A stretch of DNA of 64,000 nucleotides, from IMG/VR virus record IMGVR_UViG_3300015262_000001, positions 164,598-228,597 of that record; one strand, written 5' to 3'. Shown one piece after another: positions 11,939 to 31,842 of this stretch; the stretch's first letter is position 1, and every line of letters starts with the position of its first letter. The notes under the pieces were generated by a model that was not told the origin of the DNA, did not search any database, and worked only from the letters and a program-made list of their open reading frames with translations. The translations under genes were made by a program, and so were the position numbers.

Positions 11939-14397
11939 ACTATTGAGTGCTGATTGACCTCACCTGGTAAGGTAAGACCTTCGTACCGCAAGGCGATGAT
12001 GTTAGGATCTCTAAAGACCCCGAGTTGATTAAAATAATGGGACACCAGGAACAGTTGGCGGGCGTCGTTACTCTGTGTGTATTCCTCCACAAAGTTAAAG
12101 AACCTGCCGCGTTTGATTTCATCCAGGAATGGACCCACCTCGTCCATGATCAACGGGAGTGGAAACCCGAGGTACCCCAGTAACACAAAGCGAAAAGCCC
12201 AATCTAAAATATCAGTTTCGCCGCCACTGCAATCTGACACGTCCGGTGTAGGGTCTTTCTCACCCTTGACCACAGGAAAGCGGTACGTCAGATCACCGTT
12301 CTCTTTGCTGCACGGTTTGATGTACAGTGGGGTATTCCAGATTTTGTTAACCACAGCATTCATGTTGCCACAGATAGCGGTAATGAAGTCACTCATTAAC
12401 TTACCGATCAAACCCTTGTTAGGGCAAAGACCGTCCATGTGCACTTCAACAATGGTTAGCCGACGTTTCAAGCGAGCGATGTCAGCCGAGATGGATTGCA
12501 CCACTGCTGTCAGGGACTTGCTCTTGATGATCGAGGTCATGTAGTGTTCTTTGTCAGAGGTCAGTTCACTGATGCGATGATCCACCGCAGAGCGCAGACT
12601 TACCTTCCCCTCACTCTCCAAACCTTGCAGGATCTCGAACCGCAATTGCTCTAATCGCTTTAAATCTTCCCCATAGGTTTGCATGCCCCGCAATGTGTTA
12701 CTAAGGGCGTCAATTTTGGCTCGGTAGAAAAGGATTTTGTTGTTGACATCCACGAGCTCTTTTTCAGTGGTGCTAACGTAGATGGCCGCGTCCAACACCT
12801 TGTTGCGATCCAGGAGCGCTATACGTGCATCCAGGAGCTTTTCTTCTTCTGCCAGCGTGTCACGGTAACCCAGCAGCTCGGCTTTGCGGCTAACAAGCTC
12901 CAGAGCGTTCTGAAGACGGTGTGTAGCCCAGCGTCCTACTTCAAACTGCTTGATCAGTTCCGGCAGGATCCTGACATGACTGTTCTCACGGATAAAGGTA
13001 AACAACTGGTTCATGGAGATAAACCATTCACTGTCGTTGTCCAACTTATCCTGGAGTTCGTCTCGTTCCTTTTCCAACTTCTCAATCTTCTTGATCGAGT
13101 AATCAATGTTGGACTTAAGGTTAGCCAGTTTCTGAGGAGTCATCCCCAACTTGAACTCATGTGTACAGTCCGGACACTCAACCGTCTCAGCCTGTTCATA
13201 ATGTGCCAACTGATGTTGCATGTTGGCGAGGTCGTTGGTGAAACTCTTCAGTTCAGTTCCAACCACTTCCATGCGGTTCTGGAAAGCTTTGTACTGGTTA
13301 CCTGTAAGCTCCTTAGAGCTCGCTGGAGTCACGCGGTTAAGAAACTGCATCAGTGCAGGGGTAACCTGCGCCAAACCATCTAACGGGTTCTCTGGGTCAT
13401 TAAAGACAGGGTATTGCTTCAATCCCTGTTCAATGACTTCAAGCTTGATCAACGTCTCAGCGATATCGCCTTTAACGTGCTTGGTCTGTGCTTTAAAGGC
13501 ATCAGGATCCTTAAGGAATTCCTCCAGCCCCTCCAACATACCAGCATGTTCGCTGATCACCCCTTGCAACACGTTCGCCTGATCGCGATAACCGTCCAGC
13601 ATACGACGGCTCTGGATAATGGTGTCAGTGTATTCTCGCTTGCTCCACCAAACACCGCTGAGCTTATTAGCCAGCAATTGATCAGTAAGCAGATCGAGTT
13701 CCTGTTTCTTAAGCTGAACAGCTGGATCCAGTTTAACCGACTCCAAACTCCCCCGCAGTAGAAGTGACTGTTTCAGTTCTTCTTCCACATCCCGTACGCG
13801 ACGTTCCAACTCTTCCACGCCACACTCGTTGATGTAGGAGAGCTTGCGGTTCTCTTCAGTGTAACGACCCACCTGATTCTTAATGGCGGCTTTCAACTCA
13901 TTACGTGCAGTCTTCAAGCGGCCATACACACCCAACGCATAGTCAGTGTTGTTCGGGTAGATCTGCATCAATACATCTTTACGACGAGACGCAGACATGG
14001 CCGACAGTCGATCGGCAATACGAATACCGCTAATCACTTTAACCAGACCAGTGTCCAAACCGAAGTGGATCTCACACAACTCTTTCTGCACACTGAACGT
14101 GCCGTTGCTGTTGAGTTCTTCCCCGTCATCGATCTTGAAACTGTGACCATTACCAATGCCGGTGTAAGAATCCATCGTGTAAACTTTACTACCAACCTTC
14201 CACTTAACAAACTTACGGCCGTTCTTGTAGTTGCCGTTCTCCGGAGGAAGGGGATTCATTTCCTTGAGGATCGAACTCTTACCTACACCGTTCAGGGAGA
14301 TAAAGAGGTTGATCATATGTTCGGTATCAAGTTCCACTTTATGAATATTGCTACTCAAGAGCGGAACATAGTTCTCTAGAATCAATTTAAGTAGCAT
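11932..14397 (-). CDS. sbcC: SbcC/Rad50-like SMC ATPase
   Basis: Walker A NGVGKS, long coiled coils with a central CPDC zinc hook, signature SGGE, Walker B LIMDE, H-loop LVSH. Confidence 0.93.
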   Translation of the reverse strand: MLLKLILENYVPLLSSNIHKVELDTEHMINLFISLNGVGKSSILKEMNPLPPENGNYKNGRKFVKWKVGSKVYTMDSYTGIGNGHSFKIDDGEELNSNGTFSVQKELCEIHFGLDTGLVKVISGIRIADRLSAMSASRRKDVLMQIYPNNTDYALGVYGRLKTARNELKAAIKNQVGRYTEENRKLSYINECGVEELERRVRDVEEELKQSLLLRGSLESVKLDPAVQLKKQELDLLTDQLLANKLSGVWWSKREYTDTIIQSRRMLDGYRDQANVLQGVISEHAGMLEGLEEFLKDPDAFKAQTKHVKGDIAETLIKLEVIEQGLKQYPVFNDPENPLDGLAQVTPALMQFLNRVTPASSKELTGNQYKAFQNRMEVVGTELKSFTNDLANMQHQLAHYEQAETVECPDCTHEFKLGMTPQKLANLKSNIDYSIKKIEKLEKERDELQDKLDNDSEWFISMNQLFTFIRENSHVRILPELIKQFEVGRWATHRLQNALELVSRKAELLGYRDTLAEEEKLLDARIALLDRNKVLDAAIYVSTTEKELVDVNNKILFYRAKIDALSNTLRGMQTYGEDLKRLEQLRFEILQGLESEGKVSLRSAVDHRISELTSDKEHYMTSIIKSKSLTAVVQSISADIARLKRRLTIVEVHMDGLCPNKGLIGKLMSDFITAICGNMNAVVNKIWNTPLYIKPCSKENGDLTYRFPVVKGEKDPTPDVSDCSGGETDILDWAFRFVLLGYLGFPLPLIMDEVGPFLDEIKRGRFFNFVEEYTQSNDARQLFLVSHYFNQLGVFRDPNIIALRYEGLTLPGEVNQHSIVI

Positions 14398-15501: not shown

Positions 15502-18390
15502 TTACGTCTTCACATCTCGATGAGTAAAGAACTGGTTGACGCCCTGCCCGCCATTATCAGCGAAGTAAGGAATTGCAGAACCATGTCGTGTTGCACTGAT
15601 GGATTTACCGTCCATCACGATGTAATTCTTTTGCAACACCAGGATGCCATTGGTGCAGATACCAAACAAGATCTCGTTGTTAGCCGGTTGACGAATGACC
15701 GTAGAAGCCACCGCAATTAGCGTAGTACCGAGACGTTGCAGGTAGCAGTAGTAAGTACCGGTAGCACCTACTTTAACTGCGTAGTCGCGATCCAGGATCG
15801 TGGTACGACCGTTCAACACCACACGAGCACCAGCGGGTAAACGCACCCAACCGGTTTCGTTAACATTGAAAGGATCGATCTTGCCAGAACCACCACCCAC
15901 TTCAGTCATCAGTGTAGCGAAACGAGTGTTGCCCGGCAGATGCTGGTAGACTCCTTTGCCAGCCAGGAGCAGCGGTGGATAGATTTCCTCGACAGTGTCG
16001 AAGGCATCAGTCCGTTGGTACAGCCGTGCTTTGTTGACAGAACCTTTAACAAACGAAGGAGTTGCCGTGGTAAAGCCGTTGACTGTAAAACTCAAGTCAC
16101 CGTACACATTACCAAAAGCCCGGGTTACCGCTACCTGGAAGGTGTTGGTGTTAACCTGTACCGCCAAGAGGTCAGAGTAGGTCAGCCAGACATCATCGCC
16201 CGACGCAGAAGCACGGTTGCCCGTCATTGCCGGTTGATTGCCGTCGGTAACCTGATACATCTTCAAACCACCCGTAGTGGTATAGTTCAGGCTAGCCGTG
16301 GAGCCAGACACCGTCAAACCCACCACAGCCGCTTCTGCATAGCAGAGACCATCACTGATCACCAACAGTGCGCGACCGGGTGTCAAACTAAACACCTGGA
16401 TCTGAGGTACCCGGTAAGACGGATCCTGCAATGGGTTAGCGATAGCGGCACGAGCCATTACACTACCACTCGCAGCCTTGATCGCCATGACACTACCAAT
16501 AGCCATTGCTACCGGTTCGCCTACAGTCAGGATGTGGTTAGCGAACTGGAAGGAACTCTTACCGACGAAGTGGTTGTTCTCGTTGAACACCAGAGCTGAT
16601 GTAGCTACCCCGACCCCAGACTGGTTTACATACGCTGACATACTGGCTGGCATATCTGCCATGTTTTCGTTGTCGTCAATCGAGTCAGGCAAACGAATCC
16701 CGAAGGTTCCATCTCCACTCTGTGTACTGACGATGCTGTCGGATACCCACCCGAACTCCTGCCAACCGAAGCGACCCGTTTTAGAGTTTACTCCGTATAC
16801 CAGGAACGATGATTGCCCACCACCGTTGGTGAAAGGCAGGATACGTTCAGGCAGCAAACCAAAGGCTGCATGGCGGCTAGGAACGTAGATCTCCGGTACG
16901 GCCAGCTTAGGATCAACCGTAGGACGATTCGCCATCAAGAATTCCTTGATGCCTTTGTAGGTTGTAGCGAAACGTTTCACCCGCATACCGTTCTTGGTAG
17001 AACAGCTTTTAACCATCTCACCAGAGGTCAGCATGGCACCTGGGTATTGCACCAGGTTAAGCAGATCATAACGGTTGCCGTCTTTAAACCAGTTGGACTG
17101 GCCTACTGGCAACAGATCAGTACCCAGGGTATCCTTGGTACGAGTCCCCAGTTGACGGAAGGTGGCAGTACCACCAGCCCCGAGACTGCCAGGAATCACA
17201 GACTCGATAAAGCTGAACACCAGGTTACGAGAAACCGCACCCAACGTTACCTGCACCGACACTGCCACATGCATGTAGATCTCGGCGTTAGGCACGTTCC
17301 AGAACAGAGTGGTGACCACGCCATGACTACCACCCGCGATGGTCATGACTGCATCCGCAGGAAGATTTACGTATTGCGCCAGGTCGATGGACTGACTACC
17401 GTTAGCCGGAGCGCTATAAGCAGGGGTATCCATGCGGTCAAACAACGCCAGATAGTTCGCTGGCACCAGCGACACCAGAGTTGGGTCCGTTGTGGAGTTG
17501 GCCACGTAGAAGAACTTGTGGTTCAACGTAAGCACTGTGCCTGCGTACGAACTCGATACTGCCAGGCCTTTATAGGTCGTAGCCGCAAAGAGGTTGAATA
17601 CCAGGTAGTTGAAGTTACCGCCAGCCATAGCCAGCGAATTCTTGTACTGGTAGATCTGTCTGTCAGCCAAAGGCTTAAAGAAGACCGCGGAACCGTCCGA
17701 CGCATTGCACCCTACTGTGTTCCAGGAAGCAGTCAGGTAGTTGGAACTGAGCCCGGTAACCTCACCCAGCTTGGCGCCTTTAGAACCACCCAACGGCATA
17801 CTGTTAAAGATCGACTGGTTCTGATACTGAGCAGGATCAGAGTACGGCGAGAAGATCAGTCGGTCAGTGTTCAGCAGCATCCCTGTTTTCTTGCTGGCGC
17901 CAAAGTAGCGCACCGGCTCTACCCGCGTAGGCGTAGGAATAGGGTACTGGTCAGGATAGAAGAACGACGCAAACTGATACAAGTCGTTCAACTGGTAGTC
18001 TGTCAACACAAACGACGCATTGTTAGCCACCAGAGAAGCCTTGGCACCTTCAGGAGTTACAAAAGCCTGTACAGGTGCCAAGGCAATCTGCTCAGCCTTG
18101 GTAGCCGTCCGGAAGTTATCCTTCTTGCTTAGACCAATCGACGCCTTGGTCTCTCCGTGTTGCGCACCCCGAGAAGCCAAGTGTGCATCAATTGGAGCGG
18201 CCACAGTGTTAACGAAGATTTCTACGTTCTCACCGATGGTTTCCAGTTTCTCTGCGTTGTTACGGTTGAATTCTTCCGTGGCCAGCTGAATGGCGTAGGT
18301 GAGTTTGTTGAACTTCTTGATCACCTCACCAAACCGAGGCGCTGGGTTTTCGATGAATGGCGGTTCCCCACCCAAAATAATCATAGCCAC
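15502..18390 (-). CDS. tail fibre/tail tip protein, phiKZ gp131-like family, paralogue 1 (962 aa)
   Basis: HGETKASIGL..KDNFRTAT motif; C-terminal domain (GWV...NGR...YYCY...ISATRHGSAIP) homologous to the next two genes. Confidence 0.8.
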   Translation of the reverse strand: MAMIILGGEPPFIENPAPRFGEVIKKFNKLTYAIQLATEEFNRNNAEKLETIGENVEIFVNTVAAPIDAHLASRGAQHGETKASIGLSKKDNFRTATKAEQIALAPVQAFVTPEGAKASLVANNASFVLTDYQLNDLYQFASFFYPDQYPIPTPTRVEPVRYFGASKKTGMLLNTDRLIFSPYSDPAQYQNQSIFNSMPLGGSKGAKLGEVTGLSSNYLTASWNTVGCNASDGSAVFFKPLADRQIYQYKNSLAMAGGNFNYLVFNLFAATTYKGLAVSSSYAGTVLTLNHKFFYVANSTTDPTLVSLVPANYLALFDRMDTPAYSAPANGSQSIDLAQYVNLPADAVMTIAGGSHGVVTTLFWNVPNAEIYMHVAVSVQVTLGAVSRNLVFSFIESVIPGSLGAGGTATFRQLGTRTKDTLGTDLLPVGQSNWFKDGNRYDLLNLVQYPGAMLTSGEMVKSCSTKNGMRVKRFATTYKGIKEFLMANRPTVDPKLAVPEIYVPSRHAAFGLLPERILPFTNGGGQSSFLVYGVNSKTGRFGWQEFGWVSDSIVSTQSGDGTFGIRLPDSIDDNENMADMPASMSAYVNQSGVGVATSALVFNENNHFVGKSSFQFANHILTVGEPVAMAIGSVMAIKAASGSVMARAAIANPLQDPSYRVPQIQVFSLTPGRALLVISDGLCYAEAAVVGLTVSGSTASLNYTTTGGLKMYQVTDGNQPAMTGNRASASGDDVWLTYSDLLAVQVNTNTFQVAVTRAFGNVYGDLSFTVNGFTTATPSFVKGSVNKARLYQRTDAFDTVEEIYPPLLLAGKGVYQHLPGNTRFATLMTEVGGGSGKIDPFNVNETGWVRLPAGARVVLNGRTTILDRDYAVKVGATGTYYCYLQRLGTTLIAVASTVIRQPANNEILFGICTNGILVLQKNYIVMDGKSISATRHGSAIPYFADNGGQGVNQFFTHRDVKT

Positions 18391-18432: not shown

Positions 18433-21400
18433 TTAAGGCAACAGCTCGCCATTATGAAGGAATACAAACAAGCCTTCATCTTGAGGGTAGCCCGCGGACA
18501 TAGGAATGGTCCCACCTTCACGGGTATAGCTCAGCAGCAAATCGCCCACCATAAACGGTTGTTCGCGAGTGATGGTCAAGATCTGTCTGTCGTTGGTAAC
18601 GATGGTCGCTACCCGCAGCATGGAGCCGCTCTTACGAAGAGCCACTGACGACAACAGATACTTAGGTGTTTCATCCTCGATTGTTGCGTACATGTAAAAC
18701 GTTTTGTTCTGCGGAGCAGGGTCAATGTCACGGAGGTCGATCGTCCCACCCTGGATCGAGTAAGCCGTTCCGTTTATCATCATCCTGATATTGTCCTGGA
18801 TAAACAACAGCCAGCCAACTTCAGGATACACCGACGTAGGAACAATGTAACCCACCCCAGACTTCGCATGAATTGCAGCACCACCACCTGTGTACTGATA
18901 CGGGAACAGTGTTTGGGTGATAGAGGTGTTAGCAGGGTCATTCGCCACAATGGTAACGTCTGTCATCCCTACACCCGGCCACATTACTGCCACATCGCCG
19001 TACTGTCGCGGAATCGATCCTACCGCCAAGTTCTCGATCTGATTATTACCGAAGTTCAAATCGAAGATCGTGGCAATGCTGTTACGACTCGAGTAAGGTA
19101 CATGGGTGTGTCCTGCCACCATCAACACCTTTAGGTAGTTGCCATCCCGGTAGGCGGTGAATATCGGTTTAGCGATAAAGACATCGATCATGGCGTCAAA
19201 CTGAATGTAATCCCTCAACACAGGTTGACGAACAGTTGATACATCAGCCGGCGCACTTAGCCAGTTAAAGCTGGTAATGAGGTACACACCAGGATGATCA
19301 GCGTTAGGCGCTTCCAGGTTTGGTTGACCAATCAGTACTCTGGAGCGGAACTGCTGAGTTGCGTCAATGATCCAGTTAACCATTACCACGCTGTGGTTAA
19401 GACCGTGGAACATCCCGCCGTTCTCAGCCCCCAGATGGTTAATCGTAAACGCCCAACGAGTGGCTCCTCCGGTAAGCGCCTTGAGTTGATCGAGCACACC
19501 CTGCCGCAGACCAAAGAAGCTAGTACCCGAATAGGTGGCTACCTTGTTAATCGTGTCTAACGACTTGGTGTAAGTCCTTGGGAAGGACATCAAAACGTTT
19601 CCGTTGGCAGGTGCACGCAGAGAGGCAACCGCTGGCAGGTGCTGGCTTGTCGGATAAACCGTTGACCATGCACAGAAGCTCATCGAACCGCTACCCTGAT
19701 CTACACCCGCAGCAGCCAGCTCAGGACCAGACCCTGTGATACCCAACATGCCATCGCCACGCGACAAATTAGTGGAGTAGATCTCAGTAGTCAGTGGACG
19801 AGAGTTGATGTTTATACCCAGTGTCAGGTTGTTCACGCCTTCCCGAACAGCGTAACCACCACTTACCTTTCTGAAATACACTTTACGCTGCAAGTCCGGA
19901 GTGGTCATGTCAGCGGCTGAAAACGATTCACCATCAGCTTCAAACGTCATGCATGAGGGATACACCCCGTTCTTTGTGGCTGGTTGAACTGACGGGGTAT
20001 GTATCACATTACGTTTAACCGAAACGGTATCGCTATCCATCAATCTGGATAGTAGTGCTTCAGCGCTGTTGATATTGTCCATTTGCAGAACGTTCAACCG
20101 ACATGGGAACTCAGAGGCACCTTCAAACACACAAGTGGACACCATCTCACCAGTAGACAAAAGAACTGTTGCAGGTTGTTGGTAGGCCACGAGCAGGTTA
20201 TAAAAATGCATATATTGCCGGAGTCCCACACCTGCGTCTCCATTTTGGCTGTGGTCCAGCGTAACAGGCGGGGACTTACCTTGCCGGGACATTACACCGT
20301 TCGCCGGGTTGAAGATGTAATACATCTCGGTAACGCCAGCCAGCGTACGAGTGTAGATTGGGTTAGACGGATTATCCAGGTACGACATGTGGAAAAACTG
20401 GATTGTGTGGAAATAGTAGTTCCCATTTCCGCCGGTTTGTGGCCAGGACAAGTTCAAGTCACGACGCAGAATTGAAATCCAGGTGACGGGTAGGGTCATG
20501 GTGTAACGACCGAATCGAGTAATCTGGTTGTTGCCGTCTTTGAAAACCTGTTGAGCCTGGAAATCCAACACCCCGTTGTACTGAGTGCCGTCCCAATCTT
20601 GGTAGGTCAAAGGAACGGCTTCCCAGGTTACACCCAAGCCGTTAACAACATCCACAGTCCTAACACGGTAGAAACGGCTCTTAGGAACACCCTCTACTAC
20701 GTAGGCCTGAACCAACACCAAGTAAGCACCCATGTGGTGAATAGTCGCCTGGTCGTTGTGGCCAAACGTAGTGGCGTTACCGTAAGGGGAGCCAAAGAAC
20801 GCAGTGATGGCACTCATGTTGCAGCGAACGTAAGCGTGAGCACCTGGATCGAAGGAACCATTGGTCAGACAGATAAACCAGTCATTGGTCCCTGCCACGC
20901 CCGTCATGATCACCTTGTTACCACTGCCCGCAATGATGCGGTCAACGTCGATTCCCAACGCTGTCAAAGCCGGTGGACGGTACTTGTAGTTGCTGTAAGT
21001 AACCCGGATGTTGTCCTTGTTGTAGTTCTCAACCACGGAGAAATACAAGCCTTTGGTACGGCCGTCATAGTGGTTAGACAACAGCATCATCAGACCACTT
21101 GGCTCCAGACAGATACCTGAACATTCAGTCTGCTGGCCCATCCCTTCAAACGAACCACTGATGTTTGGTGGCAAGAAGGATTCACCGCTGTACGAACTGA
21201 TCGGGAAGATACCCGCCAGCATCGCCTTATCGGTGTCTGGGACGTAACTCTTCGCCAGAGCTACCACGCCATGGGGTGTACTGAGAACGTCGCTTCTAAC
21301 GCCTGCCAGGTCCTCTGGAAGGGTGGCGGTACGGTAGTTGTCATGGTTACCCATGTCAATGTCGAACGCATCAGCTTCATGCGGGTTGTTGTAGTTCTTG

Positions 21401-22044
21401 TCGTGTGCTTGCAGGATAACCAGTTGTTGATCACGTGCGGCATACAACTTCTGGTAGGCGTCTTCTACGGCTGCGGTCAGCTTGTCATCGAAGTCAGGAT
21501 CCCGGGTACTGCGGATACCTTCCAGCTGAGCGAAGAAGTAAGTGAAATCATACCAGTCCATGATTTCAGTTTTGATGTTGTGCGTGTGGTATTCAGGCGG
21601 TAGGGTAGGTGGTACGAAGAACACCTTGCTCCAAGGGATTGGTGTCTTGCCCTTGTGCATTTCGTCGAGCCATTCTTGCAGGTTGTTACGGGGCACAAAC
21701 CAAGCCCCGATACTCTGATAGTCAACGGTAACAAACTCGTTAGCTGCCAGGATTGCGTCAGAGACACGGATAAAGGTACAAATAGAACGACCAGTGATTT
21801 CACAGAAGGGAACAAACTCACCTTCTACGTAGTAATCACGGTCACGGGTAAGAATACCACCCGCTTGGTTACGAACCACGAGCAGACCAGGTTCGTTAAA
21901 GAAAGGAGACCCGTTAGGAATCAGCCAGTTCAAGGTTTTATCCTTGAGTGGGATCTTCTCACCAGGAATGGTGTTGACAGGATTGACGCCACGGATGTCA
22001 AACACTAAGAGCGGAATGGAATCCATCACTTTAACCTTATTCAA
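18433..22044 (-). CDS. tail fibre/tail tip protein, paralogue 2 (1203 aa)
   Basis: N-terminal anchor (P..PFF...DYY), NISGSFEG and C-terminal IDLRDIDPAPQNKTFY shared with paralogue 3. Confidence 0.85.
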   Translation of the reverse strand: MNKVKVMDSIPLLVFDIRGVNPVNTIPGEKIPLKDKTLNWLIPNGSPFFNEPGLLVVRNQAGGILTRDRDYYVEGEFVPFCEITGRSICTFIRVSDAILAANEFVTVDYQSIGAWFVPRNNLQEWLDEMHKGKTPIPWSKVFFVPPTLPPEYHTHNIKTEIMDWYDFTYFFAQLEGIRSTRDPDFDDKLTAAVEDAYQKLYAARDQQLVILQAHDKNYNNPHEADAFDIDMGNHDNYRTATLPEDLAGVRSDVLSTPHGVVALAKSYVPDTDKAMLAGIFPISSYSGESFLPPNISGSFEGMGQQTECSGICLEPSGLMMLLSNHYDGRTKGLYFSVVENYNKDNIRVTYSNYKYRPPALTALGIDVDRIIAGSGNKVIMTGVAGTNDWFICLTNGSFDPGAHAYVRCNMSAITAFFGSPYGNATTFGHNDQATIHHMGAYLVLVQAYVVEGVPKSRFYRVRTVDVVNGLGVTWEAVPLTYQDWDGTQYNGVLDFQAQQVFKDGNNQITRFGRYTMTLPVTWISILRRDLNLSWPQTGGNGNYYFHTIQFFHMSYLDNPSNPIYTRTLAGVTEMYYIFNPANGVMSRQGKSPPVTLDHSQNGDAGVGLRQYMHFYNLLVAYQQPATVLLSTGEMVSTCVFEGASEFPCRLNVLQMDNINSAEALLSRLMDSDTVSVKRNVIHTPSVQPATKNGVYPSCMTFEADGESFSAADMTTPDLQRKVYFRKVSGGYAVREGVNNLTLGININSRPLTTEIYSTNLSRGDGMLGITGSGPELAAAGVDQGSGSMSFCAWSTVYPTSQHLPAVASLRAPANGNVLMSFPRTYTKSLDTINKVATYSGTSFFGLRQGVLDQLKALTGGATRWAFTINHLGAENGGMFHGLNHSVVMVNWIIDATQQFRSRVLIGQPNLEAPNADHPGVYLITSFNWLSAPADVSTVRQPVLRDYIQFDAMIDVFIAKPIFTAYRDGNYLKVLMVAGHTHVPYSSRNSIATIFDLNFGNNQIENLAVGSIPRQYGDVAVMWPGVGMTDVTIVANDPANTSITQTLFPYQYTGGGAAIHAKSGVGYIVPTSVYPEVGWLLFIQDNIRMMINGTAYSIQGGTIDLRDIDPAPQNKTFYMYATIEDETPKYLLSSVALRKSGSMLRVATIVTNDRQILTITREQPFMVGDLLLSYTREGGTIPMSAGYPQDEGLFVFLHNGELLP
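18692..18732. repeat. 41-bp exact direct repeat, copy 1
   Basis: ATGTAAAACGTTTTGTTCTGCGGAGCAGGGTCAATGTCACG, identical to 22353-22393. Confidence 0.95.
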
Positions 22045-22093
22045 AAGAAAGGACGCCAGGGAGGAATACTCCCCGGCTATCCGGACCTAAGTG

Positions 22094-25000
22094 TTAAGGA
22101 AGGATTTCGCTCTGGTAGAACCAAGGGATTTGTCCTTCCTCATTGACCAGACCAGACGAAGCTGGAATGGAGTTACCGCGTTTGAGCTCACTGATGCGGT
22201 GGCCGTTCATGGCGATCACGTTGTACCGATCAATAGTAAGAATCTGACTGGCATTCGTAACAACCTTACCGACCCACAGCTGGTACTGGCTTTCCAGCCG
22301 CTTGAGAGTAGTGACCTCATACTGCGCCACACCGTCTCTCAAGAACGCATAAATGTAAAACGTTTTGTTCTGCGGAGCAGGGTCAATGTCACGCAAGTCA
22401 ATGGAACCTGCCTGGAGCACAAATGGCCGGCCATTGAAGATCACGTTGATGTCAGTTTTGAAGAAAATCACCCAACCCGTTTGTGGATAGACCGAACCAA
22501 TCAAAGCATTGTTAACAGGACCCTGTTGAACGGTGGCGGCGCCACCAGTTATAGGACCCCACGCCCAGGCCCGACTGATACCGTTATCAGGAGTTACACA
22601 AACCGTAGGAGTACCTGTGGTGGTATCTTGTCTGGCTTGAGAACTCCAACGTCGGGTATTGCGGTCGTTGTAAACAAATGACCAATCAAGAGAGTACGCG
22701 TCACTAGGTACGTACGACATGATCCCAGATCCCATGTACACCGATAGCTGATTACCGTTAAGGTAGTACCTCACACGCATCGGGCCATGGTTAGACGAAG
22801 CCGTCTCATAATCTCCGGTTGACCCGTAGATACGTGCCGTAGGGCTAAGAGGAACAGCTTGGCTGAAACCCACCCCGTGCACAATATCCAGTACGGTGAA
22901 ACCAGTTACCTGATAACGCCCGTTGATTGCGGCGTAGGTAGGCTGGATGGTCATGAACGTTGAGTACAACGTGTTGACATCGGATCCCGACGGAGCAGCG
23001 TATTGAATGCACACACAAACCGGTAACCACCCTGCTCGCGCAGACATCGGTGAATAGGTTGGGTCGCAGATCGTAATGATCTTAAACCGGGTGGCCATCC
23101 CAGGGAACTGGATTTGGCCAAACAACGCATTGACAATGTTCTCTGGATAGAGGATCTCCAGAGTAGGGACAATGGTGACCGACCCATCCACTTCGATGCG
23201 GTTGTTGTGGTTGGCAATCAACAGCACGTCGTTGGGGTTAGCCGTGTAAGCCGGCCAGGCGTTACCCTGCTTAGTCCGATCGAAGTTCTTGGTCTGTGTA
23301 CCCATGCAAAACGCACCATCTCCTACGTCCACGCCATAGGCCGTCAGGGAGTTAGTGTTGAACACTACCGTGGCCATACCCATGCCCGTCAATGCATTAA
23401 CCGGCCGAATATCACCAGTTAGCGGGCGCGCTACCACCGTTCCCAATGGGATGTTGGTAATCTCAGGACGCACCGCAAAACGCCCCGAAACCGTCTTAAA
23501 GAACAGCTTGGAATAAATCTGCTGTCTCTGTCCGGCGGCCACGTAGAACTCACCCGTTGGGGTATAGGCGAGATGCCGAGGGTTAATTGACGACGCCAAT
23601 GGGCTAATAAGCGTTTCGTTCCACAGCTTGTAGGTAAAGTCCTTAGCTAGCCCCCACAACCTGGAAATAGTGGTGTGTCGGTCATGAGAACCGGGCGGTG
23701 TAACCACTGCCGCCATGCGCGGGAAACCTTCGAATCCAGGAGATCCAGAAATGGCATACCTGCCATCCGCCAACACGTTACCGCCCTGGTGTTGGTACGA
23801 AAACAAGGATATCCACATAGCCTGGTTTTGTCTATAGGCCTCAGATGGCAACGCAGAGGGATTGTTGAAGTCAACTGTGAAGACGTTAGTCTTCGAAATC
23901 AACGACATAACCCCTGTGTTTGGATCGAAGTTGTAATTAAGCTCCGGTATATACGTAATCGAGTTGTTGAGTACCTGTCCAGAAATAGCCGCATAGAAGG
24001 CGCCCAGAAACTTCATCGCATACTGACCGGGAACCTTTGGGTTCTCTGCCAACAAAATAGGCGACGACCGGTAGAATCCCAGTGCATTGTTAGACGCCTG
24101 AGCGAAAGGGAATAGACATTTGGTTGTATAACCATTACCGTCTTTGATGTGGTCACACCAGCGGAAATACGGCGAGTTATTCCACTGCACCCCCTCTGCA
24201 TCCATGAACGTCACGTTCTGACGAACTGGAGTTACAGGGATCTGAGCCTTAACGTCGGACAACAACACACGGTAGAAAAACTTATACCGCATATCGAAAT
24301 CCATGATTGGGCTTGCGACCGGGACGCCGGTAGAAGCCGTGTGGAAGATGTAGATCCACTGGCCGACCAAAGCGATACTGACCCATGGGAACACTTCACT
24401 GACGCCGTGAGAACCAGGGCTGCTGAAAATAGCATCTACCAATGCTCTCAGGTTGATCGGAGAGTAAACGTGTTTCGCTGGATCCAGGGAGCCGTTGGTT
24501 ACCCCGATGTAATACAGCTCACGGGTCTTATCACCCACGAGGATAACGTCTTCACCACTGCCCTGAGCAATCGTGTTGACAACAGCCCCATCGATGTTGA
24601 TCCGTGCGTGGCTGTACTTGTAGCCGGTGTAAAGCAACTGGCCGTTAGCCGCATCTTCCGAATCGGTCAGGACCGAATAGTACAAGCCTGTGGTGCGACC
24701 ATCGAAACGGTTCCACAGATAAGCCATCGATCCATCAGACTCCAGGGTAATGGCGGCAGTTTCCAGGAACCCACCGAAACCTTCGAACGAGCCGTCGATG
24801 TTGGCAGGGATGAAGTTGGTGTTACCGAATCGCGAGATAGGCAACAGACCGGTCTTCAGGTATTGCGAGCTGTCGAAGCCAAAGGTCTCGATAATGGTTT
24901 CTAACCCTTGAGGGGTCAGGTGCATATCGCTACGCGCCTGCAACACGTTACCGCTGTTAGCAGTTTCAAAGTTGTCGACCTTTTCCAGTCCCACCTGCGA

Positions 25001-25654
25001 CGCTGTCAAACCGTGTTCGTTGTTGGCCTGCATATGGCGGGTCAAGAACTCGGACAACATGTCACTGTAGATAGAGATGTAGTGCACCAACAGGTCGTAG
25101 AAGTGATCGATGCGGATCTGGGTCGGTTCACGACCGTTAGCTGCTTTCATAGCTAGGTAAAGATCCATGACTTCGATCGTATCCTGCCAGCACACAACTG
25201 TACGGATCAAGCTATGACTATGCAGGTGTGGTGGGAAGACCACGGGTTTGTTCCTCAGGTTCTCCCAGAACACTGGACGATCGTCATCGACAGCCGAGAA
25301 GATCATTTGCAACATGCGGTTGTCAATTAACGAGTATTCCCCAACGACGTGATAATCAAGCAGCACGTCGGTGAGGTCCGGATCCAACAGCTCGATGAAG
25401 CAGGCTACCGGTTGACCGGCCAGATCAGTAAGGCGAGGCATGATGCTAAAGATCTGGTAATGCACACCCAGGTCAAGTGGCTGACCATTAGGTGCTTTAA
25501 CCGTCAGCGACTTGGTGAAGAACGGCGCATGGTCTGGAACAATGATCCGCGACCAAATACCAGCTGGTGTGGACTTGGGCTCATCCTGGATTTCGTTTTC
25601 CGGATTACGTCCTTCAAGGTCCTCTTGATATTCACGGACAATAGGGAAATGCAT
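22094..25654 (-). CDS. tail fibre/tail tip protein, paralogue 3
   Basis: Start moved to MHFPIVRE at 25654 (AGGAG SD); motifs HGLTASQVGLEKVDNF, NIDGSFEG and IDLRDIDPAPQNKTFY. Confidence 0.85.
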   Translation of the reverse strand: MHFPIVREYQEDLEGRNPENEIQDEPKSTPAGIWSRIIVPDHAPFFTKSLTVKAPNGQPLDLGVHYQIFSIMPRLTDLAGQPVACFIELLDPDLTDVLLDYHVVGEYSLIDNRMLQMIFSAVDDDRPVFWENLRNKPVVFPPHLHSHSLIRTVVCWQDTIEVMDLYLAMKAANGREPTQIRIDHFYDLLVHYISIYSDMLSEFLTRHMQANNEHGLTASQVGLEKVDNFETANSGNVLQARSDMHLTPQGLETIIETFGFDSSQYLKTGLLPISRFGNTNFIPANIDGSFEGFGGFLETAAITLESDGSMAYLWNRFDGRTTGLYYSVLTDSEDAANGQLLYTGYKYSHARINIDGAVVNTIAQGSGEDVILVGDKTRELYYIGVTNGSLDPAKHVYSPINLRALVDAIFSSPGSHGVSEVFPWVSIALVGQWIYIFHTASTGVPVASPIMDFDMRYKFFYRVLLSDVKAQIPVTPVRQNVTFMDAEGVQWNNSPYFRWCDHIKDGNGYTTKCLFPFAQASNNALGFYRSSPILLAENPKVPGQYAMKFLGAFYAAISGQVLNNSITYIPELNYNFDPNTGVMSLISKTNVFTVDFNNPSALPSEAYRQNQAMWISLFSYQHQGGNVLADGRYAISGSPGFEGFPRMAAVVTPPGSHDRHTTISRLWGLAKDFTYKLWNETLISPLASSINPRHLAYTPTGEFYVAAGQRQQIYSKLFFKTVSGRFAVRPEITNIPLGTVVARPLTGDIRPVNALTGMGMATVVFNTNSLTAYGVDVGDGAFCMGTQTKNFDRTKQGNAWPAYTANPNDVLLIANHNNRIEVDGSVTIVPTLEILYPENIVNALFGQIQFPGMATRFKIITICDPTYSPMSARAGWLPVCVCIQYAAPSGSDVNTLYSTFMTIQPTYAAINGRYQVTGFTVLDIVHGVGFSQAVPLSPTARIYGSTGDYETASSNHGPMRVRYYLNGNQLSVYMGSGIMSYVPSDAYSLDWSFVYNDRNTRRWSSQARQDTTTGTPTVCVTPDNGISRAWAWGPITGGAATVQQGPVNNALIGSVYPQTGWVIFFKTDINVIFNGRPFVLQAGSIDLRDIDPAPQNKTFYIYAFLRDGVAQYEVTTLKRLESQYQLWVGKVVTNASQILTIDRYNVIAMNGHRISELKRGNSIPASSGLVNEEGQIPWFYQSEILP
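22353..22393. repeat. 41-bp exact direct repeat, copy 2
   Basis: Identical to 18692-18732. Confidence 0.95.
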
Positions 25655-25742: not shown

Positions 25743-26276
25743 CTAAGGGGAGATTGGCCAATCAATAGAAGTCGGGTAACCGGGTTGTTGTTCGATTTTG
25801 CTCAACGCCACCTTGTAAGCCGCGAACGCTTTAAACGTCTTGGCGTCTTCAGTGCTCAGCAAACCGGCAATATATGCATCCGACATACCGGCAGTGGCTT
25901 GGTTAGCTGCGTCCATCAGCTGGTTACGTTGCGCTTGAACAGACGCTGCAACATCTAAAGCCCACTCAGCACCGTTCCAGACAAAGTATGGACCAGGAAA
26001 AGGTAGCGGTGTGTATTCGGCTGGTAATTCGCCCAGCTTAACCCACTCTTCCGCCATGCCATTAGTCACATCGTAGACCACACCACGGTTGTCGACAACT
26101 TGCACTGGGACTTCATCAACCAGAGCCCAGACTTTGCCTTCGTCTGCCAAAGGCAGTGGTTCCTCTGTTTCGATACCATTGCTCGGCATCAAGGTACCCA
26201 TTCCAGGAACATCCGGCAGTGTAACTGGGCCAAACAATACACCAAGATCATCAAACAAATAAACGTGCATAAACAC
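25743..26276 (-). CDS. tail fibre assembly chaperone (Tfa-like)
   Basis: DNRGVVYD...LGELP..YT..P.PGP...WNGAEW and the C-terminal AYKVALSKIEQQPGYP..IDWP, typical of Pseudomonas prophage/tailocin Tfa proteins. Confidence 0.88.
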   Translation of the reverse strand: MFMHVYLFDDLGVLFGPVTLPDVPGMGTLMPSNGIETEEPLPLADEGKVWALVDEVPVQVVDNRGVVYDVTNGMAEEWVKLGELPAEYTPLPFPGPYFVWNGAEWALDVAASVQAQRNQLMDAANQATAGMSDAYIAGLLSTEDAKTFKAFAAYKVALSKIEQQPGYPTSIDWPISP

Positions 26277-26277
26277 C

Positions 26278-28206
26278 TCAAATCATTTTAATTCGGCCAG
26301 GATAGGCGACGTTCGTTGGACGGGTTTCGTCACCACCGAAACCAGAAGTAACCCCAGGCACCCAAAGGGAGTAGTTGTTGTACCCACCGCCCATCATTTG
26401 CGTACCGAAACCACCAGCACCTGGAATGTTGTGGGTGTGATATTCGACTTGCCCGCCCTGCGTACTACCACCAGCACGACCGCTGTCAATCGGAGACCCT
26501 TCGCTCAGGAATCGTGGGAAACGACCACGAACTTCTGGACCACGGAACGTAGTGGCACCGTTACCTTGAGTCCAGCCGCCTTCTTTACCATTACGACCCG
26601 CTTCAGTGGTAAACATCCCCGACTGTTGAGCGTGATCCCACAGCCATGGAAGAGCAACCCGTGTCAGCACAGGACCGTTCATCGGACCCCAACCACCCGG
26701 GTTGAACGAGATGGTACTTTCCATTACTGGATGGCCCAACGGTGCGTTGTCATAACGACTCACCGGAATCCAGCCGCCATTCTCATCGCTTCTCAAATGC
26801 CAGTAGTCACCAGCACCCATGAGAATCAGGAATCCATAACCTTCAGCCCGCAGGTGAGTGTGGAACTTGATTTTGTCAGTTCCGGATGCAGCGACGGTGA
26901 GTGTGTTACTGGTATTGTCTTTACGACGAACGATGAAGTCGGTAATACCCAACGCTGGGTTAGAAAGAGGGAGCGTGACGGAGCGGTTACCTGCTCCTGC
27001 ATCAATGATGACAACACCCGCTTGCTCAGCGGTCAGGTCGGTGTTGACGTCGATATACGTAATAGTACCAACGCCACCGCCGGTTCCGGTACCCGGGTTG
27101 GAACCACCAGCATCCTTAACCAGGGTTACCGAGGTATTGATAGGTGCACTAACAGCGCCAATAGAATCGACCGCAGTAGCCGAAATAGTAACCAGTGTAT
27201 TATTCTGTACAGTTGGAGCTGCAAAGGTTACTTGTTCGTTTTCTGCGATGCCTGCGCTCTTGCTGAAAACAACAGTAGCGCCACCCGATTGAGTCAGTGT
27301 GTAGGTAACAGCCGAACCATCAGCGGCCACACCGCCTCTAATAGTAATAGTGTAAACAGTTGAACTACCCTGAACCGAGGAAGAAATGTTTAGTTCGGTT
27401 GGTGGAAGAGGAGCGTCACCGCCCGCACCCAAGTTCAAGGAACCGTCCGCCAGTTGACGAAGCGCTGTTTTCAACAGGTTAATAGTAACCAGAAGGTTGC
27501 CGCTATTACCCGCCAGATCGCTCGTAATACCCACGTCCATGTTGGGGGTCAGCGGGAGACCGATATCTGATTTAGAGGCAGAGTGCGCCTCGATCAATGG
27601 CAGCGAGATGTGCTCCTCCAACAACGACTTCAGCGTAACGCTTTGGCTGTTGTCGGTGACCGCCAGGATGAGACTCCTCAGTTGAGTCATCATCTCTTCG
27701 TAGTCATAGGTCTGATCAACGGGGTGATCATGCGGATCAGGTGGAAAATCCACTGGGATGGTGACCGGATCGAGGTCGGCCCAGTCAGCCACACGCGGCG
27801 AGTTGACGATGTTCGCTACCAGTTCAGCAAATGCCACTTCATTCAGCGTGAATGGCCCGCCAATGGTGTCGTACTTCGGAAGCAGTACATCACCGGCCTG
27901 TGGGCGCAGCATGATGATGGAACCGAAGCAGTTGCGGTTGTAGCCCGGGATAGCGGTACCGTTCTCTTGAACATAGCCGCCGATGAACCTGTCAAAGGAG
28001 TGACCGAAGCAGTAGTCGTAGCCCAGGATCAGGGGATCAACACTGCCCTGACGAAAGAGTTGGAAGTTACGACTGAAGAAAGGCGCCGCACGAGGAACAA
28101 ATTCTACCCGACCGGTTGCAAAGTCCGCGGTCTTGATGGTCTCGGATGTGATGCGGTTATTGACGTTTTGTTGGAAGGGGTTCCATTGGTAAACAATGTT
28201 GGCCAT
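26278..28206 (-). CDS. tail fibre with Ig-like domain and phage tail collar domain (642 aa)
   Basis: N-terminal anchor shared with the paralogues (PRAAPFF...LGYDY); collar motifs GW..NG...R...LW, TFRGPEVRGRF, HTH and ETRPTNVA. Confidence 0.88.
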   Translation of the reverse strand: MANIVYQWNPFQQNVNNRITSETIKTADFATGRVEFVPRAAPFFSRNFQLFRQGSVDPLILGYDYCFGHSFDRFIGGYVQENGTAIPGYNRNCFGSIIMLRPQAGDVLLPKYDTIGGPFTLNEVAFAELVANIVNSPRVADWADLDPVTIPVDFPPDPHDHPVDQTYDYEEMMTQLRSLILAVTDNSQSVTLKSLLEEHISLPLIEAHSASKSDIGLPLTPNMDVGITSDLAGNSGNLLVTINLLKTALRQLADGSLNLGAGGDAPLPPTELNISSSVQGSSTVYTITIRGGVAADGSAVTYTLTQSGGATVVFSKSAGIAENEQVTFAAPTVQNNTLVTISATAVDSIGAVSAPINTSVTLVKDAGGSNPGTGTGGGVGTITYIDVNTDLTAEQAGVVIIDAGAGNRSVTLPLSNPALGITDFIVRRKDNTSNTLTVAASGTDKIKFHTHLRAEGYGFLILMGAGDYWHLRSDENGGWIPVSRYDNAPLGHPVMESTISFNPGGWGPMNGPVLTRVALPWLWDHAQQSGMFTTEAGRNGKEGGWTQGNGATTFRGPEVRGRFPRFLSEGSPIDSGRAGGSTQGGQVEYHTHNIPGAGGFGTQMMGGGYNNYSLWVPGVTSGFGGDETRPTNVAYPGRIKMI

Positions 28207-30535: not shown

Positions 30536-31264
30536 TCAGTATTGCGGTGCTACAGGTGCAGGCGGTGGAGCAGGTGGAGGTGTCTCTGGTCTCTCGTTAT
30601 CTGAAGAGCGACGATTCCTGTCTTGATCCGGATTAGAGATAAAACCAGACATGGCGTTCTTCAGACGATCTTGCACACCATGTACTTGCATGATGGTAGA
30701 GATAGTCTTGCTGGAGTTCATGAACGTCCATGCCACCACAATAGGACCGACGTTGGCAATGAACATGGTGGTCTCGGAAGGCCAGCCGTGTCCACTGTTT
30801 ACCGACATGTAAGTGGTGTAAGCGTTTACGATAGCGATGATGCAAGTGGTTACCGCAGCCAGAATACCGCCAGCATTACGCAGCATTACTGACCACATAC
30901 CAAAGACTTCACGCTCAATCCCTACAGGCGTGACCGTACGGGTTACCTTCTTGACCATCTGAGCCTCTCCAGCCCCCGTAGGAGCTGTTTGCTCATCCAA
31001 CACTGATGCCAGGGCACCTTGGTCATTCATGGTGCCTGTAGGCTCTTCCAGAGTGACCGGTACTTCTTCGGTTACTGTCTTGGTTACAGAAGACCGAGCC
31101 CGACCGCTGACCATATCGATGCGATCAAGGAGTTCATTCACCAACCCACTAACACGCTCATCCATGTGGCTGATGCGTTGTTCTATTCTTTCCTCGAAAG
31201 AGGTGGATGTAGACGGCTGTGTGTTCTCCTCCTTCCTTACAGGTTCTTCAGTGCTCATTTCCAT
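30536..31264 (-). CDS. two-TM membrane protein, holin candidate (242 aa)
   Basis: Acidic N-terminal half, two hydrophobic helices and a Pro-rich tail; adjacent to the spanins. Confidence 0.5.
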   Translation of the reverse strand: MEMSTEEPVRKEENTQPSTSTSFEERIEQRISHMDERVSGLVNELLDRIDMVSGRARSSVTKTVTEEVPVTLEEPTGTMNDQGALASVLDEQTAPTGAGEAQMVKKVTRTVTPVGIEREVFGMWSVMLRNAGGILAAVTTCIIAIVNAYTTYMSVNSGHGWPSETTMFIANVGPIVVAWTFMNSSKTISTIMQVHGVQDRLKNAMSGFISNPDQDRNRRSSDNERPETPPPAPPPAPVAPQY

Positions 31265-31842
31265 ACTCCAAAGTTCTTGGCAATCTGGATCGCACGATAG
31301 AGGGTAACCGCCCCAGCATCGATGGTGTGTTCATCCGCTAAAGTGAGGTCAATGCCGTTCCAATCCAACAGGGGGAATTCCAACAACCCTTTACGGACAT
31401 CTTCCTTTTGAGTGCCTCTGAAGTTAGCACCCACTACTGCTTTGGCCAAGTTGGGGAGCACCATACTCACATGGATGCCTCGTTCAATATAGCCACCGGT
31501 CAGCAACCCCACAAACTGAATCAACTGCTTGAAGGTTAATGCGGACATCCCCAGGAAGTTATCTTCGCAGATACCGGTATCTGGGTTAAAGATATCAATC
31601 AGGGTATTGTTAGCACGTGCCAATCCATAGCTGCGTGCCATGACACTCGTGCCAGCAGTGTCGTCGTATTGCGCTGGAATATCGTAGATACACTTGTCGC
31701 CGTAAATCGTGTTCGCATACACCAGTTTAAAAGGGGCAGGCTCAGCGATGTTAACATCTACGATAAACGCCCCCATATTTGTAGTGGACGGGTCGTTTCC
31801 TTGGACCCGTACCGCTTTGGGGGACTTTACGTCCTCATGCAT
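31255..31842 (-). CDS. RuvC-like Holliday junction resolvase
   Basis: RNase H-fold acidic set: GNDPSTTNMG, ICED, KEDV and EHTIDA. Confidence 0.8.
   Translation of the reverse strand: MHEDVKSPKAVRVQGNDPSTTNMGAFIVDVNIAEPAPFKLVYANTIYGDKCIYDIPAQYDDTAGTSVMARSYGLARANNTLIDIFNPDTGICEDNFLGMSALTFKQLIQFVGLLTGGYIERGIHVSMVLPNLAKAVVGANFRGTQKEDVRKGLLEFPLLDWNGIDLTLADEHTIDAGAVTLYRAIQIAKNFGVWK

What the first reader, a model, noticed from the sequence alone, without database searches (positions are those of the whole stretch)
18692..22393. 41-bp perfectly identical block in two otherwise diverged tail-fibre paralogues (gene conversion or recombination site)
Seen: positions 18692-18732 and 22353-22393 are identical. 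They encode RDIDPAPQNKTFY with all 13 codons, including every synonymous position, the same. The flanking residues I-D-L and Y-A are also conserved in protein but use different codons (ATC GAC CTC vs ATT GAC TTG; TAC GCA vs TAT GCG). The other shared peptide, NI(S/D)GSFEG, is synonymously diverged. The block contains a 10-bp palindrome, AAAACGTTTT. The copies are direct repeats 3,661 bp apart, in frame, and lie at the start of the conserved C-terminal domain. Inference: either recent gene conversion or a DNA-level element. A crossover would yield an in-frame hybrid fibre (body of paralogue 3 with the tip of paralogue 2) and delete or duplicate one fibre, giving a receptor-range 'accordion'. 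A RuvC-like resolvase and an SbcC protein lie in the same window.
Basis: partly seen in the sequence, partly recalled or inferred. Interest (0 to 1): 0.72.

Follow-up and report, generated by a model that had tools for sequence, protein, structure and literature searches.

The report
Short gene-conversion patch between phage paralogues
Two old, highly diverged neighbouring structural genes of an uncultured jumbo phage share one 41-base identical stretch, best explained as the footprint of a tiny copy-and-paste recombination event at a conserved protein motif; this is an ordinary by-product of phage recombination, not a switch.

Summary
Window 18692-18732 and 22353-22393 are identical over 41 nt. 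They lie in frame in two minus-strand genes, A (22094-25654) and B (18433-22026). A and B are otherwise 28% identical in protein and 42% in DNA, and the next longest shared run is 11 nt.

The genome is a 228.6-kb phage related to Pseudomonas phage EL and Erwinia phage RisingSun. The A-B-C gene trio is conserved in about 25 lineages, so the duplication is ancient.

The peptide (IDLRDIDPxPxNKTFY) is conserved across the whole family, but the DNA identity is not. EL, RisingSun and most close relatives have normally diverged codons there.

In this phage and its 99.5%-identical sister strain, B carries A-type codons (CGT GAC) where all other B orthologues carry CGG GAT. B's flanks on both sides remain B-type. 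That fits a short non-crossover gene conversion from A into B. The tract is at least 4-11 nt and at most 41 nt, seeded on about 28 nt that were already identical.

I found no hybrid, deletion or duplication variant, no site-specific recombinase and no reverse transcriptase. The palindrome is not conserved. The 86 residues beyond the block are a conserved domain, not a variable tip. The "accordion" idea is therefore unsupported. Interest is low.

The parts
22353..22393 (-). Block copy in gene A, the probable donor. It encodes RDIDPAPQNKTFY plus 2 nt (A residues 1088-1100).
   Evidence: Within the block, A differs from its nearest orthologue (L010_A) at only 2 of 41 nt, which matches the flank divergence rate.
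18692..18732 (-). Block copy in gene B, the probable recipient (B residues 1099-1111). Diagnostic A-type bases are at window 18730 (CGT) and 18727 (GAC). Relative to the sister lineage, 18726, 18724, 18721 and 18720 are also diagnostic.
   Evidence: All 8 other B orthologues have CGG. This B has CGT, as do 7 of the 8 relatives' A genes. In the A-by-B difference matrix this B is closer to every A than the other B genes are.
22094..25654 (-). Gene A, 1186 aa. It is the orthologue of EL gp114 and RisingSun gp99, a virion/tail-associated protein (the ORF is open up to 25723).
18433..22026 (-). Gene B, 1197 aa. It is the orthologue of EL gp115 and RisingSun gp100 and an ancient paralogue of A (28% aa identity).
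15502..18384 (-). Gene C, 960 aa (EL gp116-like). It is the third member of the conserved trio and lacks the motif and the block.
26278..28206 (-). 642-aa protein. Its N-terminal domain belongs to the same PHROG family as that of A and B, and its C-terminal half matches tail-fibre families. It forms a variable cassette with the next gene.
   Evidence: phrog_2163, 23008, 1858; replaced by a 260-aa protein in several relatives.
25743..26276 (-). Tail-fibre assembly chaperone (Caudo_TAP) immediately upstream of A.
   Evidence: PF02413, 38 bits against a cut-off of 22.1.
31255..31842 (-). RuvC-like Holliday-junction resolvase, part of the phage's own recombination kit.
   Evidence: phrog_159, E 2e-21.
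11932..14397 (-). SbcC/Rad50-like ATPase, part of the phage's own recombination kit.
   Evidence: phrog_77, E 4e-67.

Best explanation
The block is the footprint of one short, non-crossover ectopic gene conversion between two ancient tandem paralogues, A and B, of a jumbo phage related to EL.

Both proteins carry a motif conserved across the family (IDLRDIDPxPxNKTFY) inside a conserved C-terminal beta-sandwich domain. In this clade the 3' 28 nt of the motif's coding sequence were already identical, or nearly so, between A and B.

Inferred mechanism: during recombination-dependent replication, strand invasion or annealing between misaligned A and B used this island of identity. A heteroduplex or repair-synthesis patch then copied the adjacent A-type bases into B. 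The product was resolved without crossover, so B kept its own sequence on both sides.

The phage encodes plausible machinery: a UvsX-like recombinase, an SbcC/Rad50-like protein and a RuvC-like resolvase.

The event happened after the split from the nearest 80%-identical relative and before the split of the two 99.5%-identical strains. The block is a by-product of recombination, not a functional element.

What is shown and what is inferred:
- Shown: the identity, its restriction to this lineage, the A-type bases in B, and the intact B-type flanks.
- Inferred: the direction, the tract length, the seeding on pre-existing identity, and the enzymes involved.
For: 1. The block is a statistical outlier. 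It is 41 nt against a next-longest run of 11 nt. Its pS is 0.11 against 0.75 for the whole gene. The chance probability is 1.7e-5 to 3.6e-6.

2. It is restricted to this lineage. In EL and RisingSun the longest A/B run lies elsewhere and is 12-13 nt. Across about 24 other lineages the longest A/B run is 9-17 nt, except 28 nt at this site in two relatives and 21 nt at another motif in one lineage.

3. Codon table. All other B genes read CGG GA(T/C) (GTG/ATT/ATC) GA(T/C) (C/G)Cx. This phage's B reads CGT GAC ATT GAC CCT, which is this phage's A sequence. CGT is found in 7 of the 8 relatives' A genes (including sister strain L005) and in none of the 8 other B genes.

4. In the A_i by B_j difference matrix, own A versus own B scores 0. 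Other genomes score 5-9 within the genome, no lower than between genomes. The own-B column is the most A-like, with a mean of 4.6.

5. B's sequence immediately 5' and 3' of the block matches the B orthologues. In a tree of the C-terminal 420 nt without the block, own B groups with L010_B. This is a patch, not a crossover.

6. The sister strain (99.3-99.6% identical) shares the block.

7. Recombination genes: a UvsX-like gene (69% identical to RisingSun gp218, which matches phrog_97) at G000:C1:102143-103606; a RuvC-like gene; an SbcC-like gene.
Against: - There are few informative sites. Against the most similar B allele found (L023_B), only 2 bases of own B need to have changed. Against the sister L010_B, 6 bases need to have changed.
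- One shared base (ATT rather than ATC) is B-like, not A-like. A prior synonymous change in A, or a second event, is therefore needed.
- The 3' 17 nt are kept similar in most lineages by an unexplained site-specific codon conservation. Part of the 41 nt therefore does not need conversion at all.
- The C-terminal domain diverges slowly among orthologues (pS 0.2-0.4), so the event need not be very recent.
- There is no direct observation of the recombination.
Confidence: 0.78

Rival explanations
1. Chance plus constraint. The two copies were already almost identical here because of the conserved peptide and site-specific codon conservation. The last 2-4 synonymous differences then disappeared through independent point mutations.
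For: - L023_B differs from the block at only 2 nt, and L010_A also at only 2 nt.
- Cross-genome A/B pairs reach as few as 2 differences.
- ACG, AAA, AAC and TAC at NKTFY are conserved across deep lineages.
- The 28-nt identity exists in two other lineages.
Against: - It needs 3-6 specific synonymous substitutions, every one towards the state of the other paralogue, with no new difference arising at about 10 other synonymous sites. My rough estimate from the pS values is 1e-3 to 1e-4.
- 0 differences is the minimum of 64 A-by-B comparisons.
Confidence: 0.12
2. A maintained DNA- or RNA-level element. This could be a recombination site for programmed fibre deletion, duplication or hybrid formation, a protein-binding palindrome, or an internal regulatory signal.
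For: - The repeats are direct and in frame.
- A 10-nt palindrome is present.
- There is unexplained conservation of non-preferred codons (AAA ACG) at the motif across lineages.
- The phage has recombination genes.
Against: - The 41-nt sequence and the palindrome are not conserved in relatives.
- There are only two copies in 228.6 kb.
- No resolvase, invertase, integrase or reverse transcriptase is encoded.
- No hybrid or copy-number variant appears in about 25 related loci.
- Depth between the repeats equals flank depth.
- The swapped part would be a conserved 86-residue domain.
Confidence: 0.05
3. Assembly artefact. A de Bruijn assembler created or misplaced a shared k-mer in a metagenome assembly.
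For: The genome is metagenome-derived. Logan k=31 contigs break exactly at the repeat.
Against: - Four assemblies from two samples and two pipelines (JGI; MEGAHIT k141) agree.
- The 41-mer unitig has 2x depth in both runs.
- The body and tail of each gene match the same orthologue, so there was no swap.
Confidence: 0.01

Closest known systems
Ectopic (non-allelic) gene conversion between duplicated genes, for example concerted evolution of tufA/tufB in Salmonella (recalled from memory, not checked here)
   Same: A patch of one paralogue is copied into the other without crossover. This produces an identity tract that contrasts with diverged flanks and gives phylogenetic discordance limited to the tract.
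   Different: Here the paralogues are far more diverged (42% nt identity). The tract is very short (at most 41 nt) and confined to the only island with enough identity. There is no gene-wide homogenisation, and relatives show no ongoing concerted evolution.
Recombination between conserved motifs in T-even distal tail-fibre/adhesin genes (glycine-rich motifs and His boxes). The sources are Tetart et al. 1998 J Mol Biol 282:543 and Tetart et al. 1996 J Mol Biol 258:726, as listed in PMC3157838; the link of His boxes to the 1996 duplications is recalled from memory, not read here.
   Same: Short protein motifs conserved for structural reasons give islands of nucleotide similarity in otherwise diverged fibre genes, and these islands serve as recombination substrates.
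   Different: In T-even phages the exchanges are crossovers that swap or duplicate receptor-binding segments and change host range. Here only a silent patch was transferred. No hybrid or duplication was found, and the region distal to the motif is conserved rather than hypervariable.
Invertible tail-fibre segments of Mu (Gin/gix) and P1 (Cin/cix), and shufflons (recalled from memory; Sandmeier et al. 1992 is cited in the reference list of PMC6034870)
   Same: Short identical repeats lie inside fibre genes at the border between constant and variable parts.
   Different: Those repeats are inverted, are conserved as sites, and need a serine or tyrosine recombinase. Here the repeats are direct and not conserved, and no such recombinase is encoded.

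Membership tests
Ectopic gene-conversion tract between paralogues | Identity tract significantly longer than the divergence of the rest of the alignment allows | tested here: met
   41 nt against a next-longest 11 nt. 0 of 5,000 shuffles reach it. pS is 0.11 against a median of 0.76.
Ectopic gene-conversion tract between paralogues | Recipient carries donor-type bases inside the tract but keeps its own orthologue-type sequence on both sides (non-crossover patch) | tested here: met
   Own B has CGT GAC (A-type), whereas all other B genes have CGG and most have GAT. Its flanks are B-type, and in the tree without the block own B groups with L010_B.
Ectopic gene-conversion tract between paralogues | Lineage-restricted: sister lineages lack the tract | tested here: met
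   L010, L009, L014, L016, L018, L020, L023, EL and RisingSun show 5-9 or more A/B differences in the same 41 nt.
Ectopic gene-conversion tract between paralogues | Direction and tract ends resolved by enough informative sites | tested here: inconclusive
   There are only 2-6 informative sites. One shared base (ATT) is B-like. The minimum tract is 4-11 nt and the maximum 41 nt.
Site-specific recombination switch in fibre genes (Gin/Cin-type inversion, shufflon) | Serine or tyrosine recombinase encoded by the element or genome | tested here: not met
   PF00239 and PF00589 are absent from the complete 228.6-kb genome; controls were positive.
Site-specific recombination switch in fibre genes (Gin/Cin-type inversion, shufflon) | Recombination site conserved in relatives and in inverted orientation | tested here: not met
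   The repeats are direct. The sequence is not conserved in relatives.
Diversity-generating retroelement (TR/VR pair) | Reverse transcriptase and a template/variable repeat pair with adenine-specific mismatches | tested here: not met
   There is no RVT_1 match in the genome. The repeat is an exact 41 nt with unrelated flanks.
Motif-mediated modular exchange of fibre domains (T-even type) | Conserved peptide motif giving a nucleotide-similarity island between diverged fibre genes | tested here: met
   The motif IDLRDIDPxPxNKTFY is conserved across the family. The A/B longest or second-longest run often falls there.
Motif-mediated modular exchange of fibre domains (T-even type) | Hybrid, duplicated or deleted genes with junctions at the motif among relatives or in the population | tested here: not met
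   Every complete locus (21 IMG/VR loci plus the 7 close-clade lineages, EL and RisingSun) has one A, one B and one C of normal size. Depth is flat. Rare molecules are not testable without raw reads.
Tail fibre proteins (for genes A and B) | Fibre-type anchor domain, tail/baseplate gene context, presence in the virion | tested here: inconclusive
   The N-terminal 270 aa share PHROG families with the neighbouring fibre-plus-chaperone gene and with families annotated as tail or minor tail protein. The genes sit next to a baseplate assembly gene. There is a weak PDB profile match to a tail collar fibre (E 1.4e-4). There is no Pfam match. Virion presence was not tested.

The most novel reading that the evidence does not exclude
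The nucleotide-identity islands at the two most conserved motifs may be more than by-products. One motif is GSFEG, at about residue 290. The other is NKTFY, at about residue 1098, inside the block. Both keep non-preferred codons across deep lineages. They might be maintained "recombination linkers" that bracket the variable central 740 residues and promote cassette exchange between co-infecting jumbo phages and, occasionally, between the paralogues. The 41-nt block would then be one visible product of that system.
Probability: 0.07. Interest if true: 0.5.

Novelty: new member of a known kind. Interest (0 to 1): 0.17.

Why it matters
The main value is for calibration. A perfect 41-nt repeat inside two fibre-like genes looks like a switch, but comparison with relatives shows it is a silent micro-conversion.

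It does illustrate one point. In a phage with its own UvsX/SbcC/RuvC-type machinery, ectopic exchange can occur between paralogues that are only 42% identical overall, provided a structurally constrained motif offers 25-30 nt of identity.

It also redirects attention for host-range questions. The variable parts of this locus are the central 740 residues of A and B and the upstream fibre-plus-chaperone cassette, not the C-terminal 86 residues.

Tried and rejected
- **Near-identical DNA elsewhere.** A megablast of the A-B region against the phage collection found no match. An exact 41-mer scan of IMG/VR found none beyond the phage's own record.
- **Single-protein locus search.** It found no relatives. 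An alignment-based search was needed.
- **PDB sequence searches for A.** phmmer found nothing. The profile search found only a weak N-terminal match.
- **Reads.** Only Logan k=31 contigs were available. They cannot reveal recombinant junctions across a 41-nt repeat, because every 31-mer of a recombinant junction is also parental. They showed only 2x depth of the 41-mer and flat depth between the copies, with no joints.
- **Ongoing concerted evolution in relatives.** Rejected. Within-genome A/B differences in the block average 7.3, no smaller than the between-genome average of 6.7.
- **The shared A-P-Q residues as a derived signature of conversion.** Rejected. RDIDPAPQ occurs in distant lineages and is close to the family consensus.
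- **Palindrome function.** Rejected. Most lineages have TTC, which breaks it.
- **RecA/Rad51 Pfam searches of the genome.** Negative. A UvsX-like gene was found only through the RisingSun gp218 homologue.
- **Swapped tails from misassembly.** Rejected. Each gene's tail matches the same orthologue as its body.
Full report
**Observation.**

The two stretches window:18692-18732 and window:22353-22393 are identical over 41 nt and cannot be extended by one base on either side. Both lie on the minus strand.
- One is in gene A (22094-25654, 1186 aa).
- The other is in gene B (18433-22026, 1197 aa).

Both copies are in the same codon phase. They encode RDIDPAPQNKTFY plus two bases of the next codon.

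A and B are 28% identical in protein and 42% in DNA over 1,143 aligned codons.
- The next longest identical run is 11 nt.
- No column shuffle out of 5,000 exceeds 18 nt.
- Given identical residues, 13 identical codons have a probability of 3.6e-6 (from the genes' own synonymous matching) or 1.7e-5 (from genome codon usage).
- A sliding 15-codon pS is 0.11 at the block, against a median of 0.76 and a next lowest value of 0.29.

In the whole 228,597-nt genome this is the longest internal exact direct repeat, and no third copy exists with up to 3 mismatches.

Four assemblies from two samples carry it. In two sequencing runs the 41-mer unitig has twice the depth of its neighbours. It is a real feature.

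**What the genes are.**

The window is the last 64 kb of a complete IMG/VR jumbo-phage record. Its nearest cultured relatives are Pseudomonas phage EL (44% identity for A) and Erwinia phages RisingSun and Joad (35%).

The order A-B-C-baseplate assembly protein-SbcC-like is the same as in two cultured phages:
- EL gp114-gp118
- RisingSun gp99-gp103

. A groups with gp114 and gp99; B groups with gp115 and gp100. The duplication therefore predates these genera.

A and B have no Pfam match. They match PHROG 3573 (unknown function) over their full length. Their N-terminal 270 residues match families annotated as virion structural, tail or minor tail protein.

The same N-terminal family is found in the 642-aa protein upstream (26278-28206). 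Its C-terminal half matches tail-fibre families, and it is followed by a Caudo_TAP chaperone. "Tail-fibre paralogues" is thus plausible but unproven.

An AlphaFold2 model of A's last 200 residues has a mean pLDDT of 76. Residues 73-180 of the model form a beta-sandwich. Its best structural matches are all docking or intermediate domains of phage receptor-binding proteins and their relatives:
- the cyanophage A-1(L) fibre
- the lactococcal p2 RBP shoulder
- Bordetella Mtd
- the phage 1358 RBP
- SPP1 gp22
- the T6SS TssK N-domain

The Z-scores are 5-7.7. These are modest values, so I treat the fold assignment as tentative. The domain recurs in many jumbo-phage virion proteins.

**Comparison with relatives.**

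The peptide IDLRDIDPxPxNKTFY(I/V/L/M)Y is conserved across the whole family in both paralogues. The exact RDIDPAPQ version occurs in distant lineages. Amino-acid identity therefore needs no special explanation.

The DNA identity does need one. In EL and RisingSun the two paralogues have ordinarily diverged codons at the motif.

I collected seven further lineages at 75-85% protein identity and about 20 more distant ones. The longest A/B identical run per genome is:
- 9-17 nt in most lineages
- 28 nt at this same site in two relatives (L010, L023)
- 21 nt at a different motif in one lineage
- 41 nt only in this phage and its 99.3-99.6%-identical sister strain

.

The codon table decides the question.
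- Every other B orthologue reads CGG GA(T/C) (GTG/ATT/ATC) GA(T/C) (C/G)Cx.
- A orthologues read CGT GA(T/C) ATC GA(C/T) (C/T)Cx.
- This phage reads CGT GAC ATT GAC CCT in both genes.

In the matrix of A_i against B_j differences over the 41 nt, own A versus own B is 0. All other within-genome pairs are 5-9, which is no lower than between-genome pairs. The own-B column is the most A-like of all B columns.

Immediately outside the block, own B is B-type on both sides. Without the block, its C-terminal 420 nt group with L010_B.

This is the signature of a short non-crossover conversion from A into B.
- The informative span is 4 nt (against the most similar B allele, L023_B) to 11 nt (against the sister L010_B).
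- The maximum span is 41 nt.
- One shared base (ATT where other A genes have ATC) is B-like. It needs a prior synonymous change in A, or a second small event.

**Why there.**

Several A and several B genes of this clade share the 3' 28 nt of the block. The ancestral A and B were therefore probably already identical there.

Part of this reflects an unexplained site-specific codon conservation across deep lineages.
- The Thr of NKTFY is ACG in 39 of 46 genes, against 24% gene-wide usage.
- The Lys is AAA in 35 of 51, against 38%.
- Similar conservation occurs at GSFEG (TCG TTT GAA).

An island of 25-30 identical bases lies in the range usually quoted as the minimum for efficient homologous pairing. 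This figure is general knowledge and was not tested here.

The phage encodes three recombination proteins:
- a UvsX-like recombinase (outside the window)
- an SbcC/Rad50-like protein
- a RuvC-like resolvase

My inferred mechanism is ectopic pairing of misaligned A and B during recombination-dependent replication. Pairing was seeded on the island and extended a few bases into the mismatched region. The product was resolved or repaired without crossover.

**Timing.**

Orthologue pS in the C-terminal domain is 0.2-0.4. The event is younger than the split from L010, whose B retains B-type bases. It is older than the split of the two strains. It need not be very recent in absolute terms.

**The "accordion" and "DNA element" readings.**

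A crossover at the block would fuse A residues 1-1100 to B's last 86 residues and delete B's body.

No such hybrid and no duplication appears in any complete locus: 21 from IMG/VR, the seven close-clade lineages, EL and RisingSun. All have one A, one B and one C of normal size.

In the two runs that hold the phage, depth between the repeats equals flank depth (50.8 against 51.2 and 52.1; 21.4 against 18.8 and 19.6), and no joints are reported. Only k=31 contigs were available, however, and these cannot show recombinant junctions across a 41-nt repeat.

The 86 residues that would be swapped are, together with the N-terminal 300 residues, the conserved parts among orthologues (90-99% nt identity). 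The central 740 residues are the variable part (55-77% nt identity, saturated pS). A swap would therefore not exchange a receptor-specific tip.

The genome encodes no serine or tyrosine recombinase and no reverse transcriptase. The palindrome AAAACGTTTT is broken in most lineages.

**Verdict.**

The functional-site and accordion half is not.

The closest known phenomena are ordinary ectopic gene conversion between duplicated genes and the motif-mediated recombination described for T-even distal fibre and adhesin genes (references listed in PMC3157838). This case differs from the T-even case in that only a silent patch was transferred and no domain was exchanged. It is a new instance of a known kind and of low interest.

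**Residual uncertainty.**
- Few informative sites support the direction and tract length.
- The cross-lineage codon conservation is unexplained.
- No raw reads were available.

Noticed in passing
window 25743-28206 (-): A 642-aa fibre-like protein plus a Caudo_TAP chaperone lie just upstream of gene A. The pair is present in this phage and in the L010 lineage (561 aa + 174 aa there). In L009, L014, L016, L018, L020 and EL it is replaced by a single protein of about 260 aa. This looks like the real exchangeable host-range cassette of the locus.
   Followed up: partly
window 18433-25654 (genes A and B) compared with L009-L020: Divergence among orthologues is mosaic. The N-terminal 300 and C-terminal 140 codons have pS 0.2-0.45, while the central 740 codons have pS 0.63-0.73 and five-fold higher pN. 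This suggests the central domains have been exchanged between phage lineages, or have a much deeper coalescence.
   Followed up: partly
window 22361-22366 / 18700-18705 (AAA ACG) and the GSFEG codons of A and B (about residue 289-291): Non-preferred codons are conserved at specific sites across about 26 lineages and both paralogues. Thr1098 is ACG in 39 of 46 genes (24% gene-wide), Phe290 is TTT in 44 of 50 (34%), Ser289 is TCG in 36 of 50, and Tyr1056 is TAT in 41 of 52. The cause is unknown.
   Followed up: partly
window 21601-21814 (N-terminal part of gene B): Between the two 99.3%-identical strains, 14 of B's 24 SNPs cluster in 214 nt. This looks like a recombination patch from a more divergent source.
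   Followed up: no
L033/L044, gene A residue about 385: A different lineage has a 21-nt A/B identical run at another conserved motif (T-N-G-T-M-N-P). This may be an independent micro-conversion.
   Followed up: no
window 41583-41611 and genome G000:C1:71114-71142: A 29-nt exact direct repeat sits inside a similar element of about 70 nt. It occurs in two intergenic regions next to gene starts and contains a small hairpin (AAGAC-TTAATT-GTCTT). It is probably a shared promoter or terminator element.
   Followed up: no
window 1311-1342: A perfect 32-nt palindrome lies in an intergenic gap (between the ORFs ending at 1035 and starting at 1965).
   Followed up: no
G000:C1:102143-103606 (-), outside the window: A UvsX-like recombinase gene, 69% identical to RisingSun gp218, which matches phrog_97. 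The Pfam RecA and Rad51 models did not detect it.
   Followed up: yes
window 22094-22693 (last 200 residues of A): The predicted C-terminal beta-sandwich resembles the shoulder or docking domains of phage receptor-binding proteins and of T6SS TssK (Z 5-7.7). Here it sits at the C-terminus of proteins of about 1,200 aa, and it also occurs as stand-alone proteins of 150-195 aa in other jumbo phages.
   Followed up: partly
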